Shown here: positions 15,948 through 35,682 of the stretch, in pieces
How positions within the stretch are numbered: position 1 is the first letter of the stretch
How the letters are laid out: every line of letters starts with the position of its first letter
IMG/VR virus record: IMGVR_UViG_3300029286_000009
Location: 195,733-259,732 of that record
DNA length: 64,000 nt
Reading direction: 5' to 3' (one strand)
The notes under the pieces: model-generated
Told to the model about the DNA's origin: nothing
The model's database searches: none
What the model saw: only the letters and a program-made list of their open reading frames with translations
Position numbers and translations under genes: made by a program

Positions 15948-16120
15948 CACTTTTGGGTACTATAATAATATTAGTTTTGTTGAAAAAGGAAAAGAGATAT
16001 ATTAATAGTGTACACTCAGTGGAGTGTAATCCGCGAGAATAATAGTGTACCGGAGAAAATAATATACTAGCTAGATAATAATGTACCGGAGAAAATTGTA
16101 CCCCCGAAAATAATAGTTTT
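15948..16120. repeat. Strand-switch region with promoter and imperfect direct repeats
   Basis: TGTACCGGAGAAAAT at 16046 and 16082, with variants at 16025 and 16097; AATAGTGTAC twice; TATAAT at 15961. Confidence 0.6.
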
Positions 16121-19371: not shown

Positions 19372-19889
19372 GGGGCACACAGGTATCGACAGACGTTATG
19401 AGTAGATTTGTATTGGTGGTCGGTGTGAGTGGTACCGTAAATCATTCGAATTATAAATGCCGAAGATAATTCTTTCGACATGCTCTCAGCTTTTTGTGAA
19501 GCCGACCGTAAGGTTAGTGTAGCATACGCTGGTTAATAGGGCGGAGTTCCCAGTAACTTATCAACAGAAAACTGGGTGGCGGAGGCAAGTGGGTTTTATA
19601 CCTGCTTCCTCTCCTGGTTACGAGGCTAAACTGACCTGGTGGAGGCACGCGGGAAACCGCGTCCCCTAAATCCTATGCAAGTAGGTATCCTAGTGTCAGG
19701 CATTAGGATAGAGATGGGTAGGGTAATCGCCACCGTGCGGGAAACCAAACCTTCTAGCCCGCAAAAGTCAGCGGCGGGGTCTCGAAAAGGCTGGCAAACT
19801 CTCTGTCGGGAGTATAAATATGGACTACACCATCTAAATTTACATTTCGAAAGGCGGACTGGATCTGGGTTCGACTCCCAGGTGCTCCA
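19372..19889 (+). ncRNA. ssrA: tmRNA (enlarged, about 518 nt)
   Basis: Acceptor stem GGGGCAC/GTGCTCC with G3.U wobble and discriminator A; D-loop GGTATCGAC; T-arm CTGGG-TTCGACT-CCCAG; resume context ATAAAT-GCC; tag 19459-19536; CCA not encoded. Confidence 0.92.
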
Positions 19890-19950
19890 TAAAATTGTCT
19901 TATAACAAAGCATTGCTCCCGAAGACATACAAGATTTGTATAATAAACAT

Positions 19951-20166: not shown

Positions 20167-21393
20167 ATGGCGGAAGTTTTGAGTCAAGAAGTAGTTGTAT
20201 ATCAAGAGCATATAGTGGATTTTTATGGAGACCAAATTATATCGATACAGGATGAAAATAATGATGTGTGGTCTCCTGTAAAGGGATTGTGTGGTGCGAT
20301 TGGCATCAAAGGTGTCCAAGACCAGATTAACAAAATTAAAAATGACGGGGCCTTCAGATTCAAGGCTAGCCTTGTAACTGCCCTAGATGGTAAGAATTAC
20401 TCAACTTTTTGTATTCACGCTGATGATATTCCGATGTGGTTAGCAACAATTGGTACCGGTCGCGTTGATGAGAGTGTAAAAAGTAAGTTGATTCTATATA
20501 AGAGAGAGTGTGCTAATGTATTGCGGGACTACTGGACTAAGGGTGCTGCTGTAAATCCCCGTTTGGGTAATCTTGATGTAGACCAGATTAAGAACATTGT
20601 TAATGAAGCTCTACAGGTTGCATTGGACGAATACAGACAGGCTAGGACGCCTGAGGAAATTGCTCAACTTATCTTTGAGCGAGACGTTGTTATTTTGGCT
20701 GAGACGGCGAACCGTGTAGAAAGTCCCTTTCGTGATTCTATTTACAGACGCATCGAAGTGCTTATGGACAGTCGTTTTGGTAAACTAGAACCTGCTGAAG
20801 AAGCAGAATTAGTAAAGGGACTTACTCCTTTGACCGAGAGCCTATTCCGTAAGCTATATTTGGGGCAGGGTTGGTGCCGAGATAAACTAGCTCTTTATTT
20901 CCCTAAGGAACTGAGTAGCAAGACACAGTTTGACCAGCTCCTAAAGATGTGGGATATTCCAGCACCTAAAAGGCAGTCTAGAACTTCTATCGCTTTCGCC
21001 CGCCGACTTTTGCGAGAAAATCATGTTAATAAGAAGACCATAAATCAGTTGATTACTGAGTTCAATAGGTCGCGGGAGTCTATTTTGCGGGCTATCAGTG
21101 ATCAATGGAATTCTTTGAACAAGTCTTTCAAGAAATATTGCACCGCAGGCATAATTCCTAAAGGCAGGGCTTACAGTGATTATATTGATAGGTCTCCACT
21201 TTGGGTAGCCAAGCGTGAAGCTTTTAAGGAGACTTTTGATAATACTTGTTTCTATTGTGGATACCAGTCCCCTACTGGTATTGCGGTACACCATCTAAAC
21301 TATATCCGTAGCGGACAAGAACTACCAACAGATTTGGAAATTGTTTGTAACACTTGCCACCAGAAGCGGCACAAAGAGAAGTATAACGTGTAA
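20167..21393 (+). CDS. P22 Ant-type antirepressor N-domain fused to C-terminal HNH nuclease
   Basis: VDFYGD...VKGLCGAIG..QINKIK...DGKNY..CI..IPMWLATI...YKRECANVLRDYWTKG; CFYC..VHHLNY..G.E...DLEIVCNTCHQKRH. Confidence 0.8.
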   Translation: MAEVLSQEVVVYQEHIVDFYGDQIISIQDENNDVWSPVKGLCGAIGIKGVQDQINKIKNDGAFRFKASLVTALDGKNYSTFCIHADDIPMWLATIGTGRVDESVKSKLILYKRECANVLRDYWTKGAAVNPRLGNLDVDQIKNIVNEALQVALDEYRQARTPEEIAQLIFERDVVILAETANRVESPFRDSIYRRIEVLMDSRFGKLEPAEEAELVKGLTPLTESLFRKLYLGQGWCRDKLALYFPKELSSKTQFDQLLKMWDIPAPKRQSRTSIAFARRLLRENHVNKKTINQLITEFNRSRESILRAISDQWNSLNKSFKKYCTAGIIPKGRAYSDYIDRSPLWVAKREAFKETFDNTCFYCGYQSPTGIAVHHLNYIRSGQELPTDLEIVCNTCHQKRHKEKYNV

Positions 21394-21404
21394 GGGAAGG
21401 TATA

Positions 21405-22034
21405 ATGGACTTTGAAATAGAAGTTAGGTCAGCAGGTGAGCTTTGTGAGAAGCTTCGTAATGTTACGTTGAGGGGCAGTACAATACCCCCTTATTTGAAT
21501 TCTTTTATTAGAATTGAAACCTTTAACCCCCGCAATTTATCACCGTGTCAGCGGTACGCTTTATTACCGGAGCTCAAGAAAATAGAGGAATTGCGGTGGG
21601 AAATTCTTAGAGAATACGGGCAAGACATTTTACAGCTAAATGGCTATCTGAAGTGTCACTACCCAGATAAGACTATTGACATATTACCGCCGGTCTGTGA
21701 GGAGTATGTAACACCTTGGGGTGAGTTGAAAGCCATCATAAACGACGGGTTGCATCGGGTATTTTTAGCCTATCAGATGGGTATTCCTGTGAACGTTGCT
21801 TACATTAGGGGGGTGCATCCGGGTTACCCCTATTACGCGCATATGAATCCCAAAGGATTTGACGACATTGAACTTATAGAGGAAATACCGGAGAATTATG
21901 TGAAGAAGTTTCATGTTGCCAAAAACCACAAAGAGCTTTTCAGAAATTTCAGTAGTAAATTTGAGAACGTAGGGGACTCAAGACCTAGGAAACAAGAGAC
22001 CTTCCCTGAGGAAGTTTTAAAGCTTTTGGGATAA
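21405..22034 (+). CDS. ParB/Srx N-terminal-like protein
   Basis: LPPVCEE...IINDGLHRVFLA motif. Confidence 0.55.
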   Translation: MDFEIEVRSAGELCEKLRNVTLRGSTIPPYLNSFIRIETFNPRNLSPCQRYALLPELKKIEELRWEILREYGQDILQLNGYLKCHYPDKTIDILPPVCEEYVTPWGELKAIINDGLHRVFLAYQMGIPVNVAYIRGVHPGYPYYAHMNPKGFDDIELIEEIPENYVKKFHVAKNHKELFRNFSSKFENVGDSRPRKQETFPEEVLKLLG

Positions 22035-22115: not shown

Positions 22116-23186
22116 ATGACAGAACGCTATCAAAATTTGGCTTTGACGTTGCGCCCGCAACAGTTCAAAAATTTTATTTACAATGATCACATTGTAACGA
22201 TACTGAAGAACATTGTCACGTCTGGTAAAATTCCGGCAGGTTTGCTCTTCTCTGGCTCGCGGGGACTAGGGAAGACAACTCTGTCTCGTTTATTTGCCAG
22301 AGCAATTAATTGTAATAGCAGAAAAACTGCAGAACCTTGTGGTAAGTGTGAAAGCTGTCAATTATCTATGGCACAGAGACATCCTGATATATTAGAAATT
22401 AGTGGGTCTACTAACGGGAATATAGAGGATATAAGGCGTATTATAGAGCAGGCTATGCTTACTCCGGCAATTGGTAACTACAAGGTATTTATTATTGATG
22501 AAGCTCAGGGGCTGGGCAGATCTACAGCTTCATGGAATTCACTATTAAAGATTTTAGAAGAGCCGCCCCCACATGTCGTTTGGTTGTTTTGCACGACTGA
22601 AAAGGTCAAGATACCTGAAACGATTAAGTCGAGGTTAATAACGTTAGACTTAAAGTTAATTCCTACCCCTATAATTGAGAACTACCTTAAGAAGTTGCTT
22701 GCTGATGTTAAAGGCGAATCGGTTGCTCCCGTTGTTGCTCGCGTTGCCTGTAATTCTATGCGGGATGCCCTGACTTTGTTAGAGAAAGTGATATTGTACT
22801 GTAAAACCCCCAAGATTGGGTTTACGGAAGCTAACGCATTGATAGCCTTGGGGGCGTTTGACGAAACCAAGACAGCCTGTATTCTGGATGCCATAAATAG
22901 ACATGACTGTAAGGATTTGTGGTGTATACTAGAGGGGCTAGTTGATTCGGGGGTGGATTTTGATACTCTATATAATGATGCCTTAGTCGCAGGAGTTACT
23001 AATCTGATGGGAGTAATGTTGGGGGCACAGGTTGATAGAGGGGATTTGTATCAACCTTTTGTACAAATGGGCTCTCCTCGTATATTATATTTATCGGACG
23101 TGCTGGCACGGCGTAGTAAGCAATTTCATGAGGCTGAAAATAAGAAGTTCGTTCTAAGACTAATAGCGTTGGAGTTGTGTGCATAA
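22116..23186 (+). CDS. dnaX: DNA polymerase III clamp loader gamma/tau subunit
   Basis: LALTLRPQQF, GSRGLGKTT, NC...PCGKCESC, VFIIDEA, LLKILEEPP, PETIKSR, SMRDALTLLE. Confidence 0.92.
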   Translation: MTERYQNLALTLRPQQFKNFIYNDHIVTILKNIVTSGKIPAGLLFSGSRGLGKTTLSRLFARAINCNSRKTAEPCGKCESCQLSMAQRHPDILEISGSTNGNIEDIRRIIEQAMLTPAIGNYKVFIIDEAQGLGRSTASWNSLLKILEEPPPHVVWLFCTTEKVKIPETIKSRLITLDLKLIPTPIIENYLKKLLADVKGESVAPVVARVACNSMRDALTLLEKVILYCKTPKIGFTEANALIALGAFDETKTACILDAINRHDCKDLWCILEGLVDSGVDFDTLYNDALVAGVTNLMGVMLGAQVDRGDLYQPFVQMGSPRILYLSDVLARRSKQFHEAENKKFVLRLIALELCA

Positions 23187-24871: not shown

Positions 24872-25621
24872 ATGATGTTAGGGAAATTACCGAAGTTACA
24901 GAAGAATATAACGAATAGTCAAAATTTACGAGAGGCTGGACGTGTCCTACGGGACGCGTTCAACCTCATCTTAACGTATGTCCAGCCGGGGGTCTCCTTG
25001 CAGGATATAGACTTTCGTGTAGAGAAATTCTTACGTCAAAACCACGCCTTGTCCACGCCCCGTCTCCTCAATTTTCCTTACCAGTTTTCGGCATCCATTA
25101 ATTATGAAGTAGTAAATGGATACCCAGATGATAGGTGTGTGGTAGCAGGCGATATAATATCAATAGATATGGGCATTTTTTGTAGGGGTGTGTTTGTGGA
25201 TAAAGCGGTGTCTGTTGCATTTCCTCCAGTTAGTGGTAAAGTAGCTTACTTACTTAAAGCCGCACAAGACTGCTTAGATGTAGGAATACGGTCTTCTGCA
25301 GCGGGAGCTAATAATAAGATTATAGGGAAGATGATAGAAATGACAGCGAATTATTACGGAATGTCTACATCTCCTCGCTTCTCTGGGCATGCTATAGGTG
25401 AGGAGCCACATATGTATCCTTTAATACCCAATGTGGCTAACGCTGCGGTTGAGGAGGTTATACTGAGAGAAGGGCAGAGTATTACGATTGAACCCATAGT
25501 ATTCTATGGCAGTTCTCATTCTATCGATTCTTCAAAACATCTTATTATTTCTGACTCAATAAGTGCTCACTTTGAAGAGACTATAATTATTCATAGTAAC
25601 CATGTTGAGGTTGTGACATGA
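24872..25621 (+). CDS. map: methionine aminopeptidase type I-like
   Basis: PGVSLQDID, SINYEVV, GDIISID, D, GHAIG, ITIEP, SAHFEETI metal ligands. Confidence 0.85.
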   Translation: MMLGKLPKLQKNITNSQNLREAGRVLRDAFNLILTYVQPGVSLQDIDFRVEKFLRQNHALSTPRLLNFPYQFSASINYEVVNGYPDDRCVVAGDIISIDMGIFCRGVFVDKAVSVAFPPVSGKVAYLLKAAQDCLDVGIRSSAAGANNKIIGKMIEMTANYYGMSTSPRFSGHAIGEEPHMYPLIPNVANAAVEEVILREGQSITIEPIVFYGSSHSIDSSKHLIISDSISAHFEETIIIHSNHVEVVT

Positions 25622-25950
25622 AAGAACTTCTATTTGTTATATGTGCTTATTCACTGGCAAGTATACTAGTTGAACAAGGTATTTTTAAAGAGCCCCGCGA
25701 ATGGCTAAAATCTTGTGTGGCAGACAATTCTAACTGGTTGCTACGCAAGTTTTGTGCTTTAATCCGTTGTATGTGGTGTGCGGGGGTATGGTGCGGATTT
25801 ATACTATGTTGGATGGGGTTTAATATAGTAGATATAAATCACTGGGATTTTTTCTTTTGTGGGCTGATAAGCGGTTTTACTACGTATTTAATTCATCAAT
25901 TTATGTTGCGTTTAGATATATATTTGAAAGAATTTGGGATTGAGTCTTAA
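25618..25950 (+). CDS. DUF1360-like membrane protein
   Basis: IFKEPREW...LIRCMWCAGVW; TM segments. Confidence 0.7.
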   Translation: MKELLFVICAYSLASILVEQGIFKEPREWLKSCVADNSNWLLRKFCALIRCMWCAGVWCGFILCWMGFNIVDINHWDFFFCGLISGFTTYLIHQFMLRLDIYLKEFGIES

Positions 25951-25968: not shown

Positions 25969-26433
25969 ATGTTAATCGTGACCTATTGGGACGATGAGGA
26001 TAATAGAAAGGTATTAAGGGAAGAAAAACTGCGTGAAAAGCGGGGGCTCCTTGTTAAATCTGCTCCTCCACCAGTTGAGTCAGCTATAGATAAAGAACAT
26101 TTAGATAAGGTTCTTGCTATCTTAGAGCAACAAATGCAATTGACTGCCGCACAAACACAGCAGCTGAACGAATTGCATCAAGCATTAGATAACCAAGGGC
26201 AGGTTTTATCTAAGCTTTTAGAAAAAGAACCTGTTGTTATAACAGAAGGTGGCATTACAAAAACTGTAAAGAGGGCTTCCGAAGAATTGCCTATTCTTGG
26301 TGATATTGATGTAAATGTTGTGGATACTTCAGGTATCGAGACACAGGGGGAGGCAGGAGAGCAAAAAACAGAGGGCAATAGCGTAAAAGACCGTGTAGCT
26401 AGACTACGGGAATTAAAGAACAAGGGGAAATAA
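25969..26433 (+). CDS. coiled-coil protein, putative actin adaptor
   Basis: Q-rich coiled coil; basic C-terminal helix VKDRVARLRELK; 2 nt upstream of the actin gene. Confidence 0.55.
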   Translation: MLIVTYWDDEDNRKVLREEKLREKRGLLVKSAPPPVESAIDKEHLDKVLAILEQQMQLTAAQTQQLNELHQALDNQGQVLSKLLEKEPVVITEGGITKTVKRASEELPILGDIDVNVVDTSGIETQGEAGEQKTEGNSVKDRVARLRELKNKGK

Positions 26434-26435
26434 AG

Positions 26436-27491
26436 ATGGAGCAAAATCAGGAATTACTTAAAGAAATACCGGTATCTATTTCTTATCTTTCAGGAATCGG
26501 AGTCGATATTGGAACTAGCTTTCTTCAAGTAGCGAGAGAGAGAACAGATGGCAAGGTTGAGTTTGTGTCTGAAAGGGACGCTTTCTATGCGATTAAACCC
26601 ACGTCGGCGGTATCCGCAAAATTTATTGAAAAATCTCTTGTTCAGAAGGGGGCTTTTGTCTTAAAATCTGATGGCATCTTTTATGTAGTGGGTAGAGAGG
26701 CGATTGCTACAGCGATAGAAAGGGGTGGCTCGGTGGAGAGACCACTAAAGAAGGGTGTCCTTAGTATGAAGGATAAAGATGCAATGGGAATGCTTGCGGT
26801 TTTGCTTAAGTCGCTTGTCAAAGAAGCTCAAACCCCAGGAGAAATATGTGTTTATTCCTATCCGGCTGACCCGTTAGACCAGTCGTTTGATGTAGTATAT
26901 CATCAACATAGGATGGGAGAAATTCTAGGTAAAATGGGGTATAAAGCTGTACCACTGTTGGAATCAGAAGCTTTAGCGTACAGTGAGCTTATGGATGAAG
27001 ATTTAACCGGAATTGCGGTTTCATGCGGTGCTGGTATGTTTAATTTTGCGTGTTTTTCAGTTGGACAGTGTCTTCTTAGCTTCAGTATAGCCCAAGGTGG
27101 TGATTACATTGATAAATCTGTAGCTAAACCTCTAGACATTTCGGAGACCGAAGTGCAGGCGGAAAAGGAAAGTCCAACTATGGATTTGAATAATCCTAAA
27201 GGACAGATACAAGAAACTATAGTGATGTATTATGACAATTTAATCAAATATGTTTGTGATGTCTTAGAAAAGAAGATTGGGCAGTTCGATGAAATGCCTA
27301 AATTCACTAAGCCTATAACTATAGTTATATCTGGAGGCACTAGTCTTCCTAAGGGCTTTATGGAAAAGATGTCTGTTGCACTTTTATCTAAAAATTTTCC
27401 ATTTACGATTGGCAACATAAAACGTGCAGGAGATCCGCTCACGGCAGTTGCGAATGGTTGTTTAATATTTTCTCAAATGATGAGAGAATAA
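26436..27491 (+). CDS. actin-fold ATPase, volactin-like
   Basis: Phosphate-1 GVDIGTS; RPLKKGVL; YSYPADPLD; YHQ; ESEALAYSEL; SCGAGM; SIAQGGDYID; adenosine motif ISGGTSLPKGF; DPLTAVANG. Confidence 0.85.
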   Translation: MEQNQELLKEIPVSISYLSGIGVDIGTSFLQVARERTDGKVEFVSERDAFYAIKPTSAVSAKFIEKSLVQKGAFVLKSDGIFYVVGREAIATAIERGGSVERPLKKGVLSMKDKDAMGMLAVLLKSLVKEAQTPGEICVYSYPADPLDQSFDVVYHQHRMGEILGKMGYKAVPLLESEALAYSELMDEDLTGIAVSCGAGMFNFACFSVGQCLLSFSIAQGGDYIDKSVAKPLDISETEVQAEKESPTMDLNNPKGQIQETIVMYYDNLIKYVCDVLEKKIGQFDEMPKFTKPITIVISGGTSLPKGFMEKMSVALLSKNFPFTIGNIKRAGDPLTAVANGCLIFSQMMRE

Positions 27492-27508: not shown

Positions 27509-28705
27509 ATGGAAAAAATGGGAAAGGAAATAGTAACAAAGGAATTTAATTTTATGGAAGACACTATTGTGGCGGTTGACCAAAACGATGTGTGGTATAT
27601 TTCTCCACGACATATTTGTGAAAATGTAGGATTAGATTGGGCTTCTCAGAGTAGAAAAATTGAGAAGGAGTCTGAGAAGTTCAACCGTTGTCTTATGACA
27701 ACAGTTGGTCACGATGGTAAACTGCGTGAAATGGTTATGATACCTGTGACACGTATAAATACATGGATATTGAGTATCAATGCAAAGCGTGTCAAAAACT
27801 TAAGAGTAAGAGCATATCTACGGAAATACCAAGATCAGCTATCCGATTGGTTGTATGAAGCGGGATTTCTAGGAGCGGCGGTAAATAAGGATGTGTTGTT
27901 ACTCCCTGCGGAACGACAGGTGGAAGTATTGGGAGATGCTCTTCACAGAGCTCGCTTGCAAAGTGAACCATTGAATGAGTATCAAGAGAAGATAGCGACC
28001 ATTTTAGGTTTACCTGACTTAGAAGGGATGGATAAATATAAGACTCAGCGTCTGCAGATGTTGACAGATGTTAAATTAGGTGTTGCTAGTCCTTTGTTCT
28101 CAAAAGGTTTGCGGGGAGTAGTAAGACTAACTGATGAACTATTTTACATCGCTTATATGATAGAAAGGTGGTGTGTTGATAAGCTGATTTGCTGTTTTCC
28201 ACAAGACTTGCCCACGCCTGTGGCGATAGAGCAATATATAAGAGATAAAGGTTATTGTGAACCTTGGGTGGTTAAACCCATTAGGCACGCAGATGCACGA
28301 AGGGTGGTTAAGCTTAATACTCTGTTTAGCTATAGTATTTCTGATTTAATAATACGATTTAATAAACCAGCTGAATTGATACACAATGCTATGTTTAGAG
28401 TAGTAAAAGATATGGAGGATGTATTTACTGCGACTGAAGTTAAACTGGAACTTCCAGCCATAAGAGACAGAGCCAGTATGTCAGCTAGGCGGGAGCAGTA
28501 TATGAAAACGGCTGAGTGGTGGGATAAGCGAAACGCTTTTTTCAAAGTTTTCAATTGTTGTGTAGTTTGTGGGGATATGGAGGTTGCATCTTCGCGATTT
28601 GAGGCACACCACTTGCACTATGATACATTAGGATTTGAGTCACCTTGGGATTTAGTGCCCTTGTGTAAAGATTGTCATACTAAGGTAGAAGGAAGGAGTA
28701 GGTGA
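27509..28705 (+). CDS. second antirepressor-N/HNH fusion protein
   Basis: RHICENVGLDWASQSRKI...DGKLREM..WILSINA; CVVC..AHHLHY..G.E..DLVPLCKDCH. Confidence 0.8.
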   Translation: MEKMGKEIVTKEFNFMEDTIVAVDQNDVWYISPRHICENVGLDWASQSRKIEKESEKFNRCLMTTVGHDGKLREMVMIPVTRINTWILSINAKRVKNLRVRAYLRKYQDQLSDWLYEAGFLGAAVNKDVLLLPAERQVEVLGDALHRARLQSEPLNEYQEKIATILGLPDLEGMDKYKTQRLQMLTDVKLGVASPLFSKGLRGVVRLTDELFYIAYMIERWCVDKLICCFPQDLPTPVAIEQYIRDKGYCEPWVVKPIRHADARRVVKLNTLFSYSISDLIIRFNKPAELIHNAMFRVVKDMEDVFTATEVKLELPAIRDRASMSARREQYMKTAEWWDKRNAFFKVFNCCVVCGDMEVASSRFEAHHLHYDTLGFESPWDLVPLCKDCHTKVEGRSR

Positions 28706-28986: not shown

Positions 28987-29280
28987 ATGGCCAATTTTAT
29001 ACCAATTGAGCATCTTAACGAGGATTACGACGCGGATAGATATGCGATGACCCCATCTCGCCGCCGTAAAATTCACAAACACCGCAAGGAGATGGACCTG
29101 TACGGACCGAAATTACCTTATGATTTCGGGATATTTCGGCATAAATTCGGTCACCGATTTTATGAGTTTGAAGCTGTTTGTCCTAAGTGCGGGTATATAA
29201 TGTACGTTACCAAACTGACTTGTGCAGTAATATGTAAGTGTGGAGAATTGGTTAAAGTAGGTCAACCACCCCACGCCTAA
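28987..29280 (+). CDS. hypothetical Zn-ribbon protein, 3' end altered by the IscB insertion
   Basis: CPKCG...CKCG; the last codons derive from the element. Confidence 0.55.
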   Translation: MANFIPIEHLNEDYDADRYAMTPSRRRKIHKHRKEMDLYGPKLPYDFGIFRHKFGHRFYEFEAVCPKCGYIMYVTKLTCAVICKCGELVKVGQPPHA

Positions 29281-29494
29281 AGGCGGGGGCTTGAAAGAGC
29301 CTTGGTTGACTAGGGGGCATTAATTTGCAGCAGTTGAGAACCAGAAATACATACACACCCCAAAATATTCCGCACGTTTCGGGCGACTGTGGTTGGACAT
29401 TAAAAGTCCTGGTGGGTAGGGACGGTGTGTCCAGCTTAAAAACGGTTTCCAACAATCCCGATGCGGTCCCAACCTCAGAAAAGAGGAGCGAAAC
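29261..29494 (+). ncRNA. omegaRNA (HEARO-type) scaffold of IscB
   Basis: GTCAACC...GGTTGAC pairing and multiple hairpins directly upstream of iscB. Confidence 0.8.
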
Positions 29495-30703
29495 TTGAGA
29501 GTATTTGTTAAAAATCAAAAAGGTAATCCATTAATGCCGACTACTCCAAGAGGAGCAAGAGTGCTTCTCTGTGCAGGGAAAGCGGTAGTGGTTAAACGAA
29601 CACCGTTCACTATCCAACTCACAGCAGCAACTGGCGAGACAAAACAGCCTGTCGTCTTAGGTGTAGACAGCGGCTTCACTCACGTCGGTTTATCTGCGGT
29701 ATCAGACAGGGCTGAATTGTATGCGGCAGAAGTCTTATTACGCACCGACATGGTTAAGCTCAATGCCGAACGAGCAATGTATCGACGTAACAGGCGAAGT
29801 CGCAAGACATGGTACCGTCAACCGAGGTTCCTTAATAGGTCGAAACCGAAGGGTTGGTTGGCACCTAGTATTCAGCACAAACTAGACTCACATAAGAAGT
29901 TGATCGACAAGGTAAAAGGACTGCTGCCAATCACCAAGGTTGTTATTGAGGTTGCCGCATTTGATATTCAGAAGATTAAAAATCCTGAGATATTCGGCGA
30001 AGGCTACCAGAATGGTGAGCAGTCCGGTTTTTGGAATGTCAGGGAGTATGTATTTCACAGGGACAGCCACAAGTGCCAAGCTCCAAAGTGTAATCATAAA
30101 GACAAAATACTTAACGTCCATCATGTTGTTAGCCGGCAGACAGGCGGTGATAGACCCCATAATCTAATTACACTTTGTGAAACCTGTCACAAGAGTCACC
30201 ATAAAAAAGCACTAGACCTTAAGATCAATGCGGGAAACGGATTCAAAGCAGAAACGTTCATGTCAATGGTAAGGTGGAGATTAACTCAGGACACAGGCTC
30301 ACAACACACATTTGGTTATATCACAAAAACAAATCGCATTGCTGCACGTTTAGAGAAGTCTCATATCAACGATGCTTTCATTATTGCAGGTGGTGGACAG
30401 AATCGGACCACAGCATTAACGATCAAACAAGTAAGAAAGTGCAATCGCAAACTATACAAAGGCAGCCGAAGCCACATCAGGAATACTGCCCCACGTGAAA
30501 TATTAGGTTATCGACGCTTCGATAAGGTGAAGTGGGGTCGTGTTGAAGCCTTTATTTTCGGAAGACGATCCACTGGCAATTTCGATATCAGGGACGGCAA
30601 CGGGAAAAGTCTCCACAAATCTATTAACGCAAAACACATTAGGTTGCTGGAAAGAGCTTCAACAAGCTTGATTTCCAGAACCTCACTTCCTCCCCAGTGC
30701 TAA
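29495..30703 (+). CDS. iscB: IscB RNA-guided endonuclease (PLMP, RuvC, bridge helix, HNH)
   Basis: PLMPT; LGVDSG; RRNRRSRKTWYRQPRFLNR; VIEVA; VHHVVSRQTGG..NLITLCETCH; KSHINDAF. Confidence 0.95.
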   Translation: MRVFVKNQKGNPLMPTTPRGARVLLCAGKAVVVKRTPFTIQLTAATGETKQPVVLGVDSGFTHVGLSAVSDRAELYAAEVLLRTDMVKLNAERAMYRRNRRSRKTWYRQPRFLNRSKPKGWLAPSIQHKLDSHKKLIDKVKGLLPITKVVIEVAAFDIQKIKNPEIFGEGYQNGEQSGFWNVREYVFHRDSHKCQAPKCNHKDKILNVHHVVSRQTGGDRPHNLITLCETCHKSHHKKALDLKINAGNGFKAETFMSMVRWRLTQDTGSQHTFGYITKTNRIAARLEKSHINDAFIIAGGGQNRTTALTIKQVRKCNRKLYKGSRSHIRNTAPREILGYRRFDKVKWGRVEAFIFGRRSTGNFDIRDGNGKSLHKSINAKHIRLLERASTSLISRTSLPPQC

Positions 30704-31894: not shown

Positions 31895-33667
31895 ATGGCT
31901 TTTGAACAATTAGAAAAACAATTTGGTACAAAATGTAAAGAACTTATAGAGATATGGAAGAGATACCCCTCCTTGGCTGCTAAAGACCTCCTATACAACC
32001 CCCTGTCATCCAATCCCGACGAAAACTTCTCTCTATCCCCCATTCAACGCGTTGTGACTAACCGAATATGGCATGCTCGTAATAGTATTACTGTAGCTTG
32101 CCGTGGTTTTGGTAAGACATTTGATGCTGCTACTATGGGTATTTTATCTGCACTTCTCAATCCGGGACGAAGAGTGGGATGTATGTCAGCTTCTTTTCGT
32201 CAGGCTAAACAGATATTTGAGGAGGTTTCTAATATATGGAATAGGTCTCCTCTCTTACAGGCATGTACTGATCGTGCACCTGTCATAGCTAATGATGCTT
32301 GTACACTGGTATTTAAAGCTGTGCCTGGGCATAACCCCTCTAAGATGATCGGTCTTCCGCTTGCGGATGGGCAAAAGGTCAGGGGGGCGCGTATGCATAC
32401 ACTGATGCTGGATGAAGTTTGTGTCATCCCAGAAAATACTTTTCAAACTGTTCTCCGCCCCTTTGCTGCTACATCTATGGAGCCCACCAAACAGACCCGG
32501 TTGGCTAAAGAACGTAGACGTATTATGGGCCTTAATCTATCTGAGGATAAGAAGCAAGAAATGTTAGACTTATTATCGGGGCGGTCTTCAGTTAACCAGA
32601 TACATATGTTTACATCGGGATATTATTCTTTTAATTGGGTGTATAATCTGTATTGCAAATATTCAGACCGTATGCATGGTATTAAGCGGGGTGCCATAGA
32701 TGGTTTAGATGATGGTTATACTGATAATCCTCTTCATTATGCTACCTTCCAAATTCCTTATTGGTCTTTAGAAGAAGGATGGTTGTCTGAGGGTGGTTTA
32801 TCTGATGCTCGCCGTGACATGTCCTCTATTCAGTTCAGAATGGAATATGAGGCTGCCTGGATATCTGATAGTGGTGGGTTCTTTAAGATATCTGACATAG
32901 AACAATGTCGTGCTGAGAATTTAGGTATAGACTTGCAAATGCGTCCTTACGGGGATCCTGGAAGACAGTATATTATGACACTTGACCCTGCTCGTACCTC
33001 TGATGCTTTCGCTATTGTCATTTCTGAAGTTGACCCCACGTTCGGACTCAAGATATCTCATATGGAGCAGCATTTCAAGGTTCCCACCCCCAAAATTGTT
33101 GAACGTATACTCCAGCTTACTAGTAAATTTAATATTGTTGAAATTGGGATGGATCGAGGCGGCGGTGGCCAAACTGTAGCTGACTATTTGGCACATGGTA
33201 ATGTTGAATTTTCTCCAATCTTTGATAAGGATGATGAACGATATAGGGGAATGCGTGGGCGACATATTTTACAACTTATAGATTTTAGTCCAACGTGGAT
33301 TGAGAATGCAAATCATAATGCGAATTTCTTGTTAGAACGAAGAAAAGTAGCTTTTCCGAAGCGCCCAATGGAAGGTGCGTCTTCCTCAAGTAAACTGGAT
33401 GAACTTGATAGGAATGTAAAAATCGTTGAGCAATTAATCATGCAGCTGATTAGTATACAGATATCTGAAACTAGAACAGGGAAAGCTCATTTTGATTTAC
33501 CTGAAACTGGTGGTGGGTTTGTAAAGCATAAAGATTTATATTCAGCATTTATTATGGCGTGTGATTTAGTATATAATAAAATTCAATCAAGTCTATTACC
33601 TACGGTTAATATGCCCTTACTAGGCATAATTACACCAAGGATGAATATGGGCGGAGGATACTACTAA
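31895..33667 (+). CDS. terL: terminase large subunit
   Basis: Walker A CRGFGKT; SFRQAK; RGAR..LMLDE; FRMEYEA; nuclease LDPARTSD; MDRGGGG; KDLYSA. Confidence 0.92.
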   Translation: MAFEQLEKQFGTKCKELIEIWKRYPSLAAKDLLYNPLSSNPDENFSLSPIQRVVTNRIWHARNSITVACRGFGKTFDAATMGILSALLNPGRRVGCMSASFRQAKQIFEEVSNIWNRSPLLQACTDRAPVIANDACTLVFKAVPGHNPSKMIGLPLADGQKVRGARMHTLMLDEVCVIPENTFQTVLRPFAATSMEPTKQTRLAKERRRIMGLNLSEDKKQEMLDLLSGRSSVNQIHMFTSGYYSFNWVYNLYCKYSDRMHGIKRGAIDGLDDGYTDNPLHYATFQIPYWSLEEGWLSEGGLSDARRDMSSIQFRMEYEAAWISDSGGFFKISDIEQCRAENLGIDLQMRPYGDPGRQYIMTLDPARTSDAFAIVISEVDPTFGLKISHMEQHFKVPTPKIVERILQLTSKFNIVEIGMDRGGGGQTVADYLAHGNVEFSPIFDKDDERYRGMRGRHILQLIDFSPTWIENANHNANFLLERRKVAFPKRPMEGASSSSKLDELDRNVKIVEQLIMQLISIQISETRTGKAHFDLPETGGGFVKHKDLYSAFIMACDLVYNKIQSSLLPTVNMPLLGIITPRMNMGGGYY

Positions 33668-35682
33668 TGGCTAAGAGGATTGTTGCAAAGGCAAAAAAAG
33701 AGGTTCAGGCGTTTCTAAATGATTACCCCGATGCGGAATTTGCGGGAGCACAAAAGGCAGAGGATGGTACAACTAAGTTAATATTTCGTCCTAGGCTTGC
33801 TGTGTTAGCCCCTGAAGAACAACCAGCATTGGCACGTGACGGGAGACATGTTCCACCCGAGATAAGAGTTAAGCAGCGTGCTATAGCTGAAATCACTTAC
33901 CGAGACGCACTTATACATTCCGATCTTGATCTTGCTAAACCTGACATCACTTCTGAGCACCCCAAGAAAATTTATAATAGAATATTTGGGTATTATCGTA
34001 GTATGGACGTTTTTGGATCGTATATTGACGTCAAAGCAGATCTCGCCGTGTCTGGTTTTGAGAATGATTGCGAGGATATGGCTATTAAAGAGTTCTATGA
34101 TAATTGGTGCCAGGATGTTGATCTGGAGCAAGTTTTGGAATGGATATATCACGAGTTTTTTACTTCCGGATTAGTTCGTACCTATAAGGTGGTAGGGCGT
34201 TATGAACCTCAGGTTAATACATTGTCGGAGGTCAAGAAGCCCCCGCAACCCGCGACTCCCAAGAGACAAGAGGGGGAAGATGACTTGGATTATAAGTTGC
34301 AAAGACAAATGTGGCTACAAGGGCAGATACCGGATTATATACCAGAAGCAGAGAATCTAAAAGAGTATGCTGCAAGAAAGAAGCGTTGGTCTAAGGGTTT
34401 TATCCCGATTGCGTACACCGTATTAAACCCCCAGGCTGTAGAACTGGTAGGTCCTCCAGATTTTAATCAAACCCGTGTGGTTTTGCACCCATCAGACGAA
34501 ATGTCGGAACTGGTGAAACGAGAGAGTATTACAGGGAAAATTACCGATGCGGAGAAATCCATACTAGAGAGTATGCCCCCAGAGATAAAGCATGCTATTA
34601 AGGAAGGTAAGCCAATAGAGCTTGATCCGGATTTTGTGGGGGCGATAGATAATAGGCGACGTCCTTACGAAAAGTATGCTATTAATCCCATGGTCAGAGC
34701 TCTAGAGGCTGTAGAATATAAGAAATCTTTACGCGAGGCTGACTATAGTACAATAGATGGTATTACGTCAGAAATATTAGTAATTACTGTCGGCGATAAA
34801 GACAATCCTGTTTTGCGTGTGGATGACTTGAAAAAAGTTTCGGATTTATTTAATACAGCACAGAAAGCTTTTCAGGTGGTTTGGAACCATACTCTAAAAG
34901 TAGAAAGAGTGTCCGCGCAAAACGTAGACCAAATCTTTGGGGCGGATAAATTTGAACAAGCTGAAAGAGATATTTCAGGGTCAATGCGGGTTCCTAGGGC
35001 CCTGTTAGATGGTCTGGTAATTGGTAATACCAGTAAAGAAGCCATGTCTATGGCTGTTAAGTCCCTGACTGCAGAGATTGCTTTTGCACGTCGACAAGTT
35101 ACGCGGTGGCTGTATAAAGAGTATAAAGCTATTGCAGATGCGTATGGATTTAAGCGCATCCCTTCTATTCGTTGGGACGATATGATTTTAAAAGATGAAT
35201 TAGCTATGAAGACCCTAGTAATGTCTTTGGTAGATAGGCGTATTATCTCTTATGAAACCGCACACAAACTGCTTGGATTTGATCCAGAGTTTGAAAAAAA
35301 GATGCTTACCAAAGAAAAGAAAGATGTTATTGATGGGAACTTTGGTATTCTCGGGTCTCCTTACCAACAGGGTGCTGGTAATAGCGGAGATAGTCAAGAC
35401 AAGCAAAAAACACCATCCGGCACGCCCTCGGAGGGCCGTCCGAAAGGTCAGCCTGCACCTAAGACCCCGGCACCAGCGACCCCAGAAGGAAAAACGAAGC
35501 ATATAATTAAGAAAGAGGTAAGAACTATAAAGAAGGAAGAGATACACCGCCAAGCAGCTAGCATAGCAGAGCTGTTTGATGAGCAGGAATTGAACTCTTT
35601 AGAAACACTTATCAAGGCAATAAGGGAGATTAAGGGTATAGAATTAGGTAGCCTGGTAAATCAGGAAGAGGGGTTGGTATGA
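33667..35682 (+). CDS. portal protein
   Basis: 671 aa directly after terL; IPIAYTVLNP; low-complexity GRP-containing C-terminus. Confidence 0.75.
   Translation: MAKRIVAKAKKEVQAFLNDYPDAEFAGAQKAEDGTTKLIFRPRLAVLAPEEQPALARDGRHVPPEIRVKQRAIAEITYRDALIHSDLDLAKPDITSEHPKKIYNRIFGYYRSMDVFGSYIDVKADLAVSGFENDCEDMAIKEFYDNWCQDVDLEQVLEWIYHEFFTSGLVRTYKVVGRYEPQVNTLSEVKKPPQPATPKRQEGEDDLDYKLQRQMWLQGQIPDYIPEAENLKEYAARKKRWSKGFIPIAYTVLNPQAVELVGPPDFNQTRVVLHPSDEMSELVKRESITGKITDAEKSILESMPPEIKHAIKEGKPIELDPDFVGAIDNRRRPYEKYAINPMVRALEAVEYKKSLREADYSTIDGITSEILVITVGDKDNPVLRVDDLKKVSDLFNTAQKAFQVVWNHTLKVERVSAQNVDQIFGADKFEQAERDISGSMRVPRALLDGLVIGNTSKEAMSMAVKSLTAEIAFARRQVTRWLYKEYKAIADAYGFKRIPSIRWDDMILKDELAMKTLVMSLVDRRIISYETAHKLLGFDPEFEKKMLTKEKKDVIDGNFGILGSPYQQGAGNSGDSQDKQKTPSGTPSEGRPKGQPAPKTPAPATPEGKTKHIIKKEVRTIKKEEIHRQAASIAELFDEQELNSLETLIKAIREIKGIELGSLVNQEEGLV

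What the first reader, a model, noticed from the sequence alone, without database searches (positions are those of the whole stretch)
25969..27491. Phage-encoded volactin-like actin with a putative adaptor
Seen: all actin-fold ATPase motifs are present. The pattern RPL..GVL / YSYPADP.D / YHQ / E..A..YSEL / GAGM.N / SIAQGGD.ID / GGTS.PKGF / P.TAVA.G matches, from memory, haloarchaeal volactin (cell-shape actin) better than MreB, FtsA or ParM. A coiled-coil gene ending in a basic amphipathic helix sits 2 nt upstream, as in filament-plus-adaptor operons. Inference: an actin-based cytoskeleton for positioning phage DNA or capsids, analogous to PhuZ tubulin of jumbo phages or AlpC, but from a different actin clade.
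Basis: partly seen in the sequence, partly recalled or inferred. Interest (0 to 1): 0.75.

Follow-up and report, generated by a model that had tools for sequence, protein, structure and literature searches.

The report
Phage volactin-like actin with adaptor
A 260-kb freshwater jumbo phage carries an actin-like filament gene of the family so far known only from salt-loving archaea. The small gene just before it encodes a partner whose tail is predicted to clip onto the actin, and the same gene pair recurs in hundreds of uncultured phages, so this looks like a widespread, undescribed viral cytoskeleton.

Summary
ORF 26436-27491 (351 aa) is a full-length member of Pfam Volactin (PF25216: 201.7 bits, cut-off 35). 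It is 32% identical to haloarchaeal volactin-type proteins (E 2e-55) but scores only 23.5 bits against E. coli MreB. Its AF2 model (pLDDT 93) matches filament-forming actins best (MamK, MreB).

ORF 25969-26433 (154 aa) ends 2 nt before the actin gene. It is predicted as a long helix, a disordered acidic stretch and a basic C-terminal helix.

New here:
- More than 546 IMG/VR contigs encode relatives, but only 5 MAG contigs among 185,579 species genomes do.
- In 80 of 88 loci examined, the ORF immediately upstream ends in the same acidic-then-basic-helix module. Its N-terminal part varies: a TM helix, a coiled coil, or a separate small membrane protein.
- Complex prediction docks exactly that module (residues 119-153) onto the actin (score 0.67, best control 0.33).
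- Haloarchaeal volactin genes are preceded by a CdpA-like 4-TM protein with a weakly similar motif.

Best reading: a membrane-tethered phage actin filament with its adaptor. The cargo and the role in infection are unknown. A ParMRC-like role in DNA segregation is less likely. Polymerisation and binding are untested.

The parts
26436..27491 (+). Volactin-family actin-fold ATPase, 351 aa
   Evidence: Pfam PF25216: 201.7 bits against a cut-off of 35, profile 3-319/321. AF2 model pLDDT 93.2, pTM 0.90. Best PDB matches are the MamK filament, MreB and Mbl. It is 32% identical to the Natrinema volactin-type protein, E 2e-55.
26505..26516 (+). Phosphate-1 motif D24-I-G-T27
   Evidence: D24, G26 and T27 are invariant in 120 homologues.
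27021..27044 (+). Phosphate-2 motif S196-C-G-A-G-M-F-N203. Ser replaces the Asp of MreB and actin. Relatives carry an intein between S and C.
   Evidence: S196, G198, G200 and N203 are invariant. BLASTP aligns S196 with the MreB phosphate-2 Asp. Haloarchaeal relatives also have S-F-GAGM-T-N. Intein insertion in P0129 and others.
27333..27344 (+). Adenosine motif G300-G-T-S303
   Evidence: G300 and G301 are invariant and T302 nearly so. The same GGTSxP occurs in haloarchaeal volactin-type proteins and in the published Hv-volactin motif table.
25969..26433 (+). Adaptor protein p154, 154 aa, translationally coupled to the actin gene
   Evidence: Homologues sit immediately upstream of the actin gene in L004 and L005 (E 8e-24 and 8e-18), with a more divergent one in L006. 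The only relatives in 5.8 billion proteins are P0121 and P0122. Complex prediction passes its controls.
26092..26223 (+). Long helix of p154 (residues 42-85), a candidate coiled coil
   Evidence: AF2 helix 42-85 with pLDDT 85-95. Weak LTXXQ match. No coiled-coil predictor was run.
26323..26427 (+). Conserved C-terminal actin-binding module of p154 (residues 119-153): acidic stretch plus basic amphipathic helix 139-153
   Evidence: These are exactly the residues at the predicted interface. hhalign aligns this module with the C-termini of the other partner groups (A-D E 3.9e-5). In HMM searches, 80 of 83 hits are the ORF just upstream of an actin gene. Helix 139-153. Net charge -4, then +5.
25618..25950 (+). 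Small membrane protein TM110 (110 aa), a probable third component acting as membrane anchor
   Evidence: At least 2 predicted TM segments. Conserved directly upstream of the adaptor in L004-L006. Group B phages have an analogous TM protein in the same position. phrog_781, function unknown. Its role is inferred only.

Best explanation
This is a phage-encoded cytoskeletal module of two genes, probably three. The 351-aa protein is a volactin-family actin ATPase and most likely polymerises into filaments. The 154-aa protein encoded 2 nt upstream is its adaptor. Its conserved C-terminal module, an acidic stretch followed by a basic amphipathic helix (residues 119-153), docks on the actin across subdomain IB and the IA/IIA face formed by helix 114-128, residues 182-190 and the C-terminal helix 333-351. 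This is the kind of site where ParR binds ParM and WH2 motifs bind actin (my own knowledge, not tested here). The N-terminal part of the adaptor decides what the filament is attached to. In most related phages that part is a transmembrane helix, and in haloarchaea it is the 4-TM domain of a CdpA-like protein. In this phage the adaptor is soluble (N-terminal helix plus long coiled-coil-like helix), and the small membrane protein encoded just upstream (25618-25950) probably supplies the anchor. The filaments would therefore be tethered to the host membrane by their ends and would organise the infected cell. Shown: family membership, fold, conserved gene pairing, the conserved module, and a predicted interface that passes its controls. 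Inferred: polymerisation, real binding, membrane anchoring through TM110, and any role in infection, whose cargo is unknown.
For: Family: PF25216 at 201.7 bits, against MreB_Mbl at 27.6 bits over a partial stretch. tblastn against 72,556 plasmids hits only haloarchaeal replicons, at 31-33% identity and E about 1e-40, and those proteins score 437-465 bits on PF25216. BLASTP gives 32% over 324 aa, E 2e-55, against the Natrinema protein, and 23.5 bits against E. coli MreB. Fold: pLDDT 93.2. Top PDB matches are the MamK filament, MreB, Mbl and BeeR. The top AFDB clusters are two actin-domain proteins at TM 0.78-0.79, ahead of MreB at about 0.64. Adaptor: the ORF immediately upstream on the same strand is conserved within four phage groups. 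Five of the six group-to-group profile comparisons align the C-termini at E of 0.0075 or lower, with A-D at E 3.9e-5; the sixth, A-B, aligns them at E 0.08. An HMM built from group D tails alone, run over 4233 ORFs, recovers mostly the upstream ORFs of the other groups. The combined tail HMM hits 83 ORFs, and 80 of them lie directly upstream of an actin gene, in 80 of 88 loci. Binding: ipSAE 0.67 in three runs (0.65-0.67) against a best control of 0.33. That mark was reached by 58 of 80 solved complexes and 2 of 110 mismatched pairs. The partner residues at the interface are 119-153. Membrane link: 31 of 37 group D adaptors have an N-terminal TM helix. TM110, and a similar membrane protein in group B, precede the soluble adaptors. 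Haloarchaeal volactin-type genes are preceded by DUF7139 4-TM proteins. These are the CdpA-like class reported next to volactin, and volactin was enriched in CdpA pull-downs (PMC12126565). Volactin filaments touch the membrane by their tips (PMC10869688). The genome has no tubulin or ParA-type ATPase.
Against: There are no experimental data on any phage member. The conserved phosphate-2 Asp of MreB and actin is an invariant Ser in this family, so the ATPase chemistry may differ. p154 itself has no TM segment, and its link to TM110 rests only on gene order. The tail-module similarity between groups is short; the A-B pair (E 0.08) and the pairs with haloarchaea (E 0.015-0.03) are weak. The complex score is the model's own confidence, used my own alignments, and may echo solved actin-peptide complexes. 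Conserved gene order may partly reflect common descent of these phages, since a clamp-loader-like AAA+ gene lies upstream in both groups A and D. Nothing indicates what the filaments move or hold.
Confidence: 0.6

Rival explanations
1. A ParMRC- or AlpAC-like DNA positioning system. The adaptor binds a phage DNA site, and growing actin filaments push or hold phage genomes, for replication, for segregation of a plasmid-like prophage, or to feed packaging.
For: The layout is an adaptor plus an actin in one operon. The module lies between replication genes (ParB-CE 21405-22034, clamp loader 22116-23186) and terminase and portal (31895-35682). One family representative (P0139) has a weak N-terminal ParB-HTH match, E 3.5e-4, below the cut-off. 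Prophage AlpC/AlpA is a precedent (PMC4446434), and the haloarchaeal actin salactin aids DNA partitioning (PMC10869688).
Against: No DNA-binding domain is found in p154. No repeats or intergenic space adjoin the operon, and the gaps between its genes are at most 18 nt. The only iterons seen are 10 kb away. Most homologous adaptors carry a TM helix, and the haloarchaeal ones are polytopic membrane proteins. There is no ParM/StbA match.
Confidence: 0.15
2. A host-takeover device. The membrane-tethered filaments act on the host envelope, changing cell shape or size or blocking division, rather than organising phage components.
For: Haloferax volactin affects the rod-to-disk shape transition (PMC10869688). 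The archaeal partner class (CdpA-like) belongs to a family of division-ring anchors. Adaptors are membrane-anchored in most phage relatives. Secreted or membrane-type proteases (trypsin-like, subtilase) and ClpP or M24 peptidases recur next to the module, and one adaptor is fused to a trypsin domain.
Against: The host is unknown. No host-targeting domain was identified. The protease association could be shared ancestry of gene order. This rival overlaps the best explanation and differs from it only in the target.
Confidence: 0.15
3. A non-polymerising ASKHA protein, such as a chaperone, a kinase-like enzyme or an FtsA/PilM-like membrane scaffold, with p154 as a substrate or co-factor.
For: Ser replaces the phosphate-2 Asp. 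Hsp70, PilM and EutJ appear lower in the structure hit lists.
Against: The best structural matches are all filament formers (MamK, MreB, Mbl, BeeR, actin). The family's founding member forms dynamic filaments in vivo (PMC10869688). There is no Hsp70, sugar-kinase or FtsA Pfam match at E up to 0.1.
Confidence: 0.05

Closest known systems
Volactin (VolA, HVO_2015) of Haloferax volcanii and its haloarchaeal relatives; Pfam PF25216
   Same: Same Pfam family over the whole domain. 31-33% identity to Halogeometricum, Haloarcula and Natrinema members, in an almost gap-free alignment. Shared motifs: DxGT, S-x-GAGM-x-N, GGDxxD and GGTSxP. A partner gene lies directly upstream on the same strand, with an acidic linker and a similar short basic helix motif.
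   Different: The phage proteins form their own well-supported clades, apart from the haloarchaeal clade, and score 202 rather than about 450 bits on the Pfam model. The host is bacterial or unknown and from freshwater, not haloarchaeal. The partner is a small soluble coiled-coil protein plus a separate small membrane protein, not a 4-TM DUF7139 (CdpA-like) protein.
ParM/ParR/parC (type II plasmid partition)
   Same: An actin-like filament plus an adaptor whose C-terminal helix is predicted to bind the actin near the IA/IIA face. The comparison with ParR is from my own knowledge.
   Different: No ParM/StbA sequence match. The adaptor gene lies upstream rather than downstream. There is no ribbon-helix-helix domain and no adjacent centromere repeats. 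Related adaptors are membrane proteins.
AlpC/AlpA of Corynebacterium glutamicum prophage CGP3 (PMC4446434)
   Same: A phage-encoded actin-like protein working with an adaptor encoded next to it.
   Different: A different actin clade: the Volactin model did not ring in the C. glutamicum control genome, assuming that genome carries CGP3. AlpA binds phage DNA, whereas nothing suggests DNA binding here.
PhuZ tubulin spindle of nucleus-forming jumbo phages
   Same: A cytoskeletal NTPase encoded by a jumbo phage. This is an analogy of purpose only.
   Different: A different fold (tubulin). This genome has no tubulin match. No evidence for a phage nucleus was sought or found.
MamK and MreB
   Same: The nearest solved structures (TM 0.66-0.70, E about 1e-15 to 1e-13).
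   Different: 14-19% identity. The MreB_Mbl HMM scores 27.6 bits on residues 100-231 only. There are no mreCD or magnetosome neighbours.

Membership tests
Volactin family (Pfam PF25216) | HMM score above the curated gathering cut-off, over the whole domain | tested here: met
   201.7 bits against 35; profile 3-319 of 321; protein residues 21-344. Confirmed on the genome record at 201.5 bits.
Volactin family (Pfam PF25216) | Direct pairwise similarity to haloarchaeal core members | tested here: met
   The plasmid-collection tblastn hits only Halogeometricum, Haloarcula and Natrinema (31-33%, E 1e-40 to 4e-43). Those proteins score 437-465 bits on PF25216. BLASTP gives 32% over 324 aa, E 2e-55.
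Volactin family (Pfam PF25216) | Family-typical nucleotide-binding motifs (GAG in phosphate 2, GGTSxP in the adenosine motif) | tested here: met
   SCGAGMFN and GGTSLP in the window protein. SFGAGMTN and GGTS(S/R)P in the three haloarchaeal proteins. The GAG and GGTSSP motifs also appear in the published Hv-volactin table (that table is machine-read and partly garbled).
Volactin family (Pfam PF25216) | Orthology with haloarchaeal volactin (placement inside that clade) | tested here: not met
   The window protein sits in a jumbo-phage clade (support 97-100). The haloarchaeal sequences form a separate clade (99-100) elsewhere in the family tree. It is a family member, not an orthologue.
Volactin family (Pfam PF25216) | Forms dynamic filaments in vivo | not testable with these tools
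   Shown only for H. volcanii volactin (PMC10869688).
Volactin family (Pfam PF25216) | Adjacent CdpA-like (DUF7139, 4-TM) partner gene | tested here: inconclusive
   The haloarchaeal loci have it. The phage has an upstream partner with a different N-terminal part. Similarity is limited to a short motif (hhalign E 0.015-0.03).
MreB/Mbl | Full-length MreB_Mbl HMM match, and similarity to a reference MreB | tested here: not met
   27.6 bits (cut-off 27) on residues 100-231 only. BLASTP against E. coli MreB gives 23.5 bits, E 0.007, over 37 aa. MreB sits on a branch of 2.8-9.4 substitutions per site from the family.
ParM/ParR/parC type II partition | ParM-type actin, a DNA-binding adaptor and adjacent centromere repeats | tested here: not met
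   No StbA/ParM match at E up to 0.1, and no DNA-binding domain in p154. No intergenic space or repeats at the operon.
AlpC/AlpA (CGP3 prophage) | Sequence relatedness to AlpC, and a DNA-binding AlpA-type adaptor | tested here: inconclusive
   No AlpC sequence was available to compare. The Volactin HMM did not ring in the C. glutamicum control genome.
PhuZ/TubZ tubulins | Tubulin/FtsZ GTPase fold | tested here: not met
   The protein has an actin fold. There is no PF00091 match anywhere in the phage genome.

The most novel reading that the evidence does not exclude
An old, portable 'anchor peptide plus volactin' module is shared by haloarchaea and a very large clade of uncultured, mostly freshwater, phages. 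In haloarchaea the pair is the CdpA-like HVO_2016 class plus volactin. A short acidic-then-basic-helix motif would be the general volactin-binding element, comparable to the ParR tail or to WH2, and it is grafted onto different anchors: a 4-TM domain, a single TM helix, a coiled coil or a protease. Phages would use it to build a membrane-tethered actin cytoskeleton in infected bacteria. That would be the first widespread actin-based counterpart of the PhuZ spindle. It would also name the long-sought membrane anchor of archaeal volactin.
Probability: 0.35. Interest if true: 0.85.

Novelty: new variant of a known kind. Interest (0 to 1): 0.7.

Why it matters
Phage cytoskeletons are known from a few cases, such as PhuZ tubulin, prophage AlpC and ParM-like proteins of plasmid prophages. 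This family is absent from PHROGs and from the viral structure library, where the best hit has 13-16% identity. Among 50,697 deposited phage genomes it occurs only in two unannotated huge phages. No paper in the searchable library mentions it. Yet more than 546 IMG/VR contigs carry it, and it comprises at least 469 clusters at 50% identity with E of 1e-30 or lower. It gives a concrete, testable pair: an actin plus a roughly 35-residue binding tail. It suggests that filament-to-membrane tethering is a common phage strategy. It also feeds back on archaeal cell biology by predicting which part of the CdpA-like neighbour should bind volactin.

Tried and rejected
- PHROGs and PDB sequence searches with the actin found nothing useful.
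- A single-sequence scan of viral contigs found only an identical copy. The alignment-based scan was needed.
- Homologue search with p154 gave only two hits. The ESM Atlas look-up gave chance-level scores. Pfam matches for p154 are all below the cut-off.
- I could not obtain the H. volcanii HVO_2015 sequence itself. 'of' does not accept plasmid loci, and W handles have no relatives. Three haloarchaeal replicon-encoded core members stood in for it.
- The top 150 representatives of the exhaustive search were all too close to the query profile to reach named archaeal sequences.
- Promoter and terminator scans around the operon were at background level.
- The first attempt at the sequencing-run look-up failed as busy; the second worked. 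No RNA run is known to hold the region, so expression was not examined and read laying was not used.
- I considered and rejected the following: MreB membership, a ParMRC-type partition locus, tubulin-like systems, and the '16-kb repeats' acting as a centromere for this module.
Full report
**1. What is there**

The window is the last 64 kb of a 259,732-bp IMG/VR virus record with CheckV completeness 96%. It encodes a large terminase, a portal and a major head protein. Near-identical sequence occurs in lake and freshwater metagenomes from five separate studies. They are separated by 2 nt, and a Shine-Dalgarno-like AAGGGGA lies inside the end of the first gene. Upstream, an M24 peptidase gene (24872..25621) overlaps the start of a 110-aa membrane-protein gene (25618..25950), which ends 18 nt before the 154-aa gene. 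The four genes form a tight block.

**2. The actin**

- Pfam's Volactin model matches at E 2.7e-59, 201.7 bits (cut-off 35), over profile positions 3-319 of 321. MreB_Mbl reaches only 27.6 bits on residues 100-231, and no ParM, FtsA, actin or Hsp70 model appears at E up to 0.1.
- The AF2 model is confident: pLDDT 93.2, pTM 0.90.
- The nearest solved structures are the MamK filament, MreB, Mbl and BeeR, followed by eukaryotic actin and Arps, at 14-19% identity.
- In AlphaFold DB clusters, the two best hits are long proteins with an N-terminal actin domain (28% and 17% identity, TM 0.79 and 0.78), well ahead of MreB at about 0.64.
- A tblastn search of 72,556 plasmids hits only haloarchaeal replicons: Halogeometricum pHBOR01, Haloarcula pNG700 and a Natrinema replicon, at 31-33% identity and E 1e-40 to 4e-43. 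Those proteins are core members of the Pfam family at 437-465 bits.
- BLASTP against the Natrinema protein gives 32% identity over 324 residues with 9 gaps, E 2e-55. Against E. coli MreB it gives 23.5 bits, E 0.007, over 37 residues.
They also agree with the motif table in the volactin paper, although that table is machine-read and partly garbled.
- One point stands out. The phosphate-2 Asp of MreB and actin is an invariant Ser in all 120 aligned family members and in the three haloarchaeal proteins.

**3. Size and range of the family**

- The same kind of scan of one genome for each of 185,579 prokaryote species found five loci, all on short MAG contigs.
- An exhaustive profile search of 1.84 billion cluster representatives found 1417 clusters at E up to 1e-3 and 469 at E up to 1e-30.
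- PHROGs has no match.
- Among 50,697 deposited phage genomes, only two unannotated huge phages (485 and 595 kb) carry a relative.
- The viral structure library has nothing closer than 13-16% identity.
- In trees, the window protein sits in a well-supported clade made of proteins from very large contigs (support 97-100). The haloarchaeal proteins form a separate supported clade. MreB joins on a very long branch.
- The deeper order inside the family is unresolved, so I make no claim about the direction of transfer.

**4. The adaptor**

I called ORFs in 88 loci and examined the gene immediately upstream of the actin gene on the same strand. Four groups emerged:

| Group | Loci | Gene(s) upstream of the actin |
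|---|---|---|
| A | The window (locus L001; L002 and L003 are a near-identical copy on a second contig), plus L004, L005 and L006 | A small membrane protein, then a 138-159-aa soluble protein |
| B | L007, L008 and the MAG locus L083 | A small membrane protein, then a 174-194-aa soluble protein |
| C | 18 loci | ClpP, then a 198-279-aa coiled-coil-like protein |
| D | 45 or more loci | A protein of about 100 aa with an N-terminal TM helix (31 of 37 distinct sequences) |

- All four kinds of partner end in the same module of roughly 35-45 residues. A conserved I/V-D...T..G.E stretch and an acidic run are followed by a basic amphipathic helix of the type (I/V)xxx(I/V)xKL(K/R)xLK.
- Profile-profile comparisons align the C-termini in every pairing. 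A-D gives E 3.9e-5, the others 1.4e-3 to 7.5e-3, and A-B only 0.08.
- I ran a less circular test. An HMM built only from group D tails was run over all 4233 ORFs of 40 aa or more in these loci. After the D-type proteins, the best hits were mostly the upstream ORFs of other groups, aligned at their C-termini: L005 at E 1.2e-4, then L010, L014, the window's own p154, the Natrinema upstream protein, L022 and L083.
- With a combined tail HMM, 83 ORFs hit at E up to 1, and 80 of them lie directly upstream of an actin gene, in 80 of 88 loci. Most of these were in the training set. Two further loci have a tail-bearing ORF 2-4 kb away, in one case behind an inserted homing-endonuclease-like gene.
- Downstream genes are not conserved across the groups.

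**5. Predicted binding**

- Complex prediction of the actin with full-length p154 scored 0.67 (three runs, 0.65-0.67) against a best control of 0.33. That mark was reached by 58 of 80 solved complexes and 2 of 110 mismatched pairs. Those counts hold only roughly, because my own alignments were used.
- The partner residues at the interface are 119-153, which is exactly the conserved module.
- The actin residues are 35, 39-47, 65-79 and 85-87 (the beta-hairpin and subdomain IB), 118-127, 182-190, 209-211 and 333-351 (the IA/IIA face and the C-terminal helix, mapped on the secondary structure).
- The score supports binding but does not show it, and it may echo solved actin-peptide complexes.
- On its own, p154 is predicted as helix 5-24, a confident long helix 42-85, disorder, then helix 139-153.

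**6. What the filament is attached to**

- p154 has no TM segment, but the 110-aa protein encoded just before it has at least two. That protein is conserved in the same position in L004-L006.
- Group B has an unrelated small membrane protein in the same place. Groups A and B also share an N-terminal hydrophobic-x-(F/Y)-W motif in the soluble adaptor.
- In group D the TM helix and the tail are in one protein.
- In three haloarchaeal genera, the gene upstream of the volactin-type gene encodes a protein of about 300 aa with a DUF7139 4-TM domain, an acidic linker and a motif (sVDxxVxGL(R/K)GL(R/K)GG). That motif aligns with the phage tails, but only weakly, at E 0.015 and 0.029.
- This is the CdpA-like class. 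Liao et al. note that CdpA-like HVO_2016 lies next to volactin HVO_2015, and that volactin was enriched in CdpA pull-downs (PMC12126565).
- Schiller et al. showed that volactin filaments are dynamic and touch the membrane with their tips (PMC10869688).
- Split and fused forms of 'membrane anchor plus tail' therefore occur across the family. This is why I read the window's TM110, p154 and actin as a membrane-tethered filament system.
- That last step is inference from gene order only.

**7. What it is for**

This remains open.

- The genome has no tubulin and no ParA-type ATPase, so the actin is the only recognisable cytomotive protein.
- The module lies between replication genes and the packaging and head genes.
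- Peptidases recur next to it: M24 in groups A and C, ClpP in C, and trypsin-like plus subtilase in D. One adaptor is fused to a trypsin domain. I cannot tell whether this is functional or merely inherited gene order.
- A ParMRC-like DNA role is not excluded but has little support. There is no DNA-binding domain, no adjacent repeats, and most adaptor homologues are membrane-anchored.
- The '16-kb repeats' are three copies of an approximately 20-nt unit at 16041-16115, in the divergent intergenic region where the coding strand switches.

**8. Novelty**

Volactin itself and phage-encoded actins as a class are known. I found no report of a virus-encoded branch of the volactin family, of its abundance, or of its conserved adaptor tail in the searchable literature. 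I rate it a new variant of a known kind. Polymerisation, binding, membrane anchoring and the role in infection all need experiments.

Noticed in passing
window 29261-30703 (+): A complete HEARO RNA (Rfam RF02033, 111 bits, model 1-211 of 211) lies directly upstream of a 402-aa RRXRR plus HNH protein. This is an IscB-type (OMEGA) RNA-guided nuclease element with its guide RNA, inside the phage and 1.8 kb downstream of the actin gene.
   Followed up: partly
window 19372-19892 (+): A phage-encoded tmRNA gene (Rfam 61.9 bits; also called by ARAGORN, with an unusual tag-peptide call).
   Followed up: no
window 27509-28705 (+) and 20167-21393 (+): Two paralogous genes combining a P22 AR/Ant N-terminal domain with an HNH nuclease. 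The one right after the actin gene is absent from the otherwise syntenic relatives L004-L006, so it looks like a recent insertion. HNH or GIY-YIG-like genes also flank the actin gene in other loci (L020, L069).
   Followed up: partly
P0129, P0190, P0192, P0211, P0251 (family representatives): Several relatives of about 700 aa carry an intein (Hint plus LAGLIDADG) inserted exactly between the Ser and the Cys of the phosphate-2 motif S|CGAGM. The conserved Cys serves as the +1 residue.
   Followed up: partly
P0172, P0139, P0124 (family representatives): Other architectures occur in the family: a volactin domain fused to Wzz/GNVR plus a ParA-like tyrosine-kinase module (1160 aa), a weak N-terminal ParB-HTH fusion, and a tandem double actin domain.
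   Followed up: no
window 16041-16115: Three copies of AATARTGTACCGGAGAAAAT-like repeats, plus nearby GGGTACTATAAT-like inverted repeats, lie in the divergent intergenic region where GC skew and coding strand switch. This may be an origin or a promoter cluster. No link to the actin module was seen.
   Followed up: partly
window 24872-25621; L012:3669-4253; L018:5367-6122; L020:7056-8087; L026:3845-4993: Peptidase genes (M24, ClpP, trypsin-like, subtilase) recur beside the adaptor-actin pair in different phage groups. In L026 the adaptor is fused to a trypsin domain.
   Followed up: partly
L088:2791-3690, L089:2917-3825, L090:2971-3894: Haloarchaeal volactin-type genes are each preceded by a DUF7139 4-TM (CdpA-like) protein. 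Its acidic tail contains a motif resembling the phage adaptor tail, which makes it a candidate volactin-binding site in archaea.
   Followed up: partly
window 21405-22034 (+): A ParB-CE domain protein (PF24392, 121 bits) is encoded just before the clamp-loader genes.
   Followed up: no
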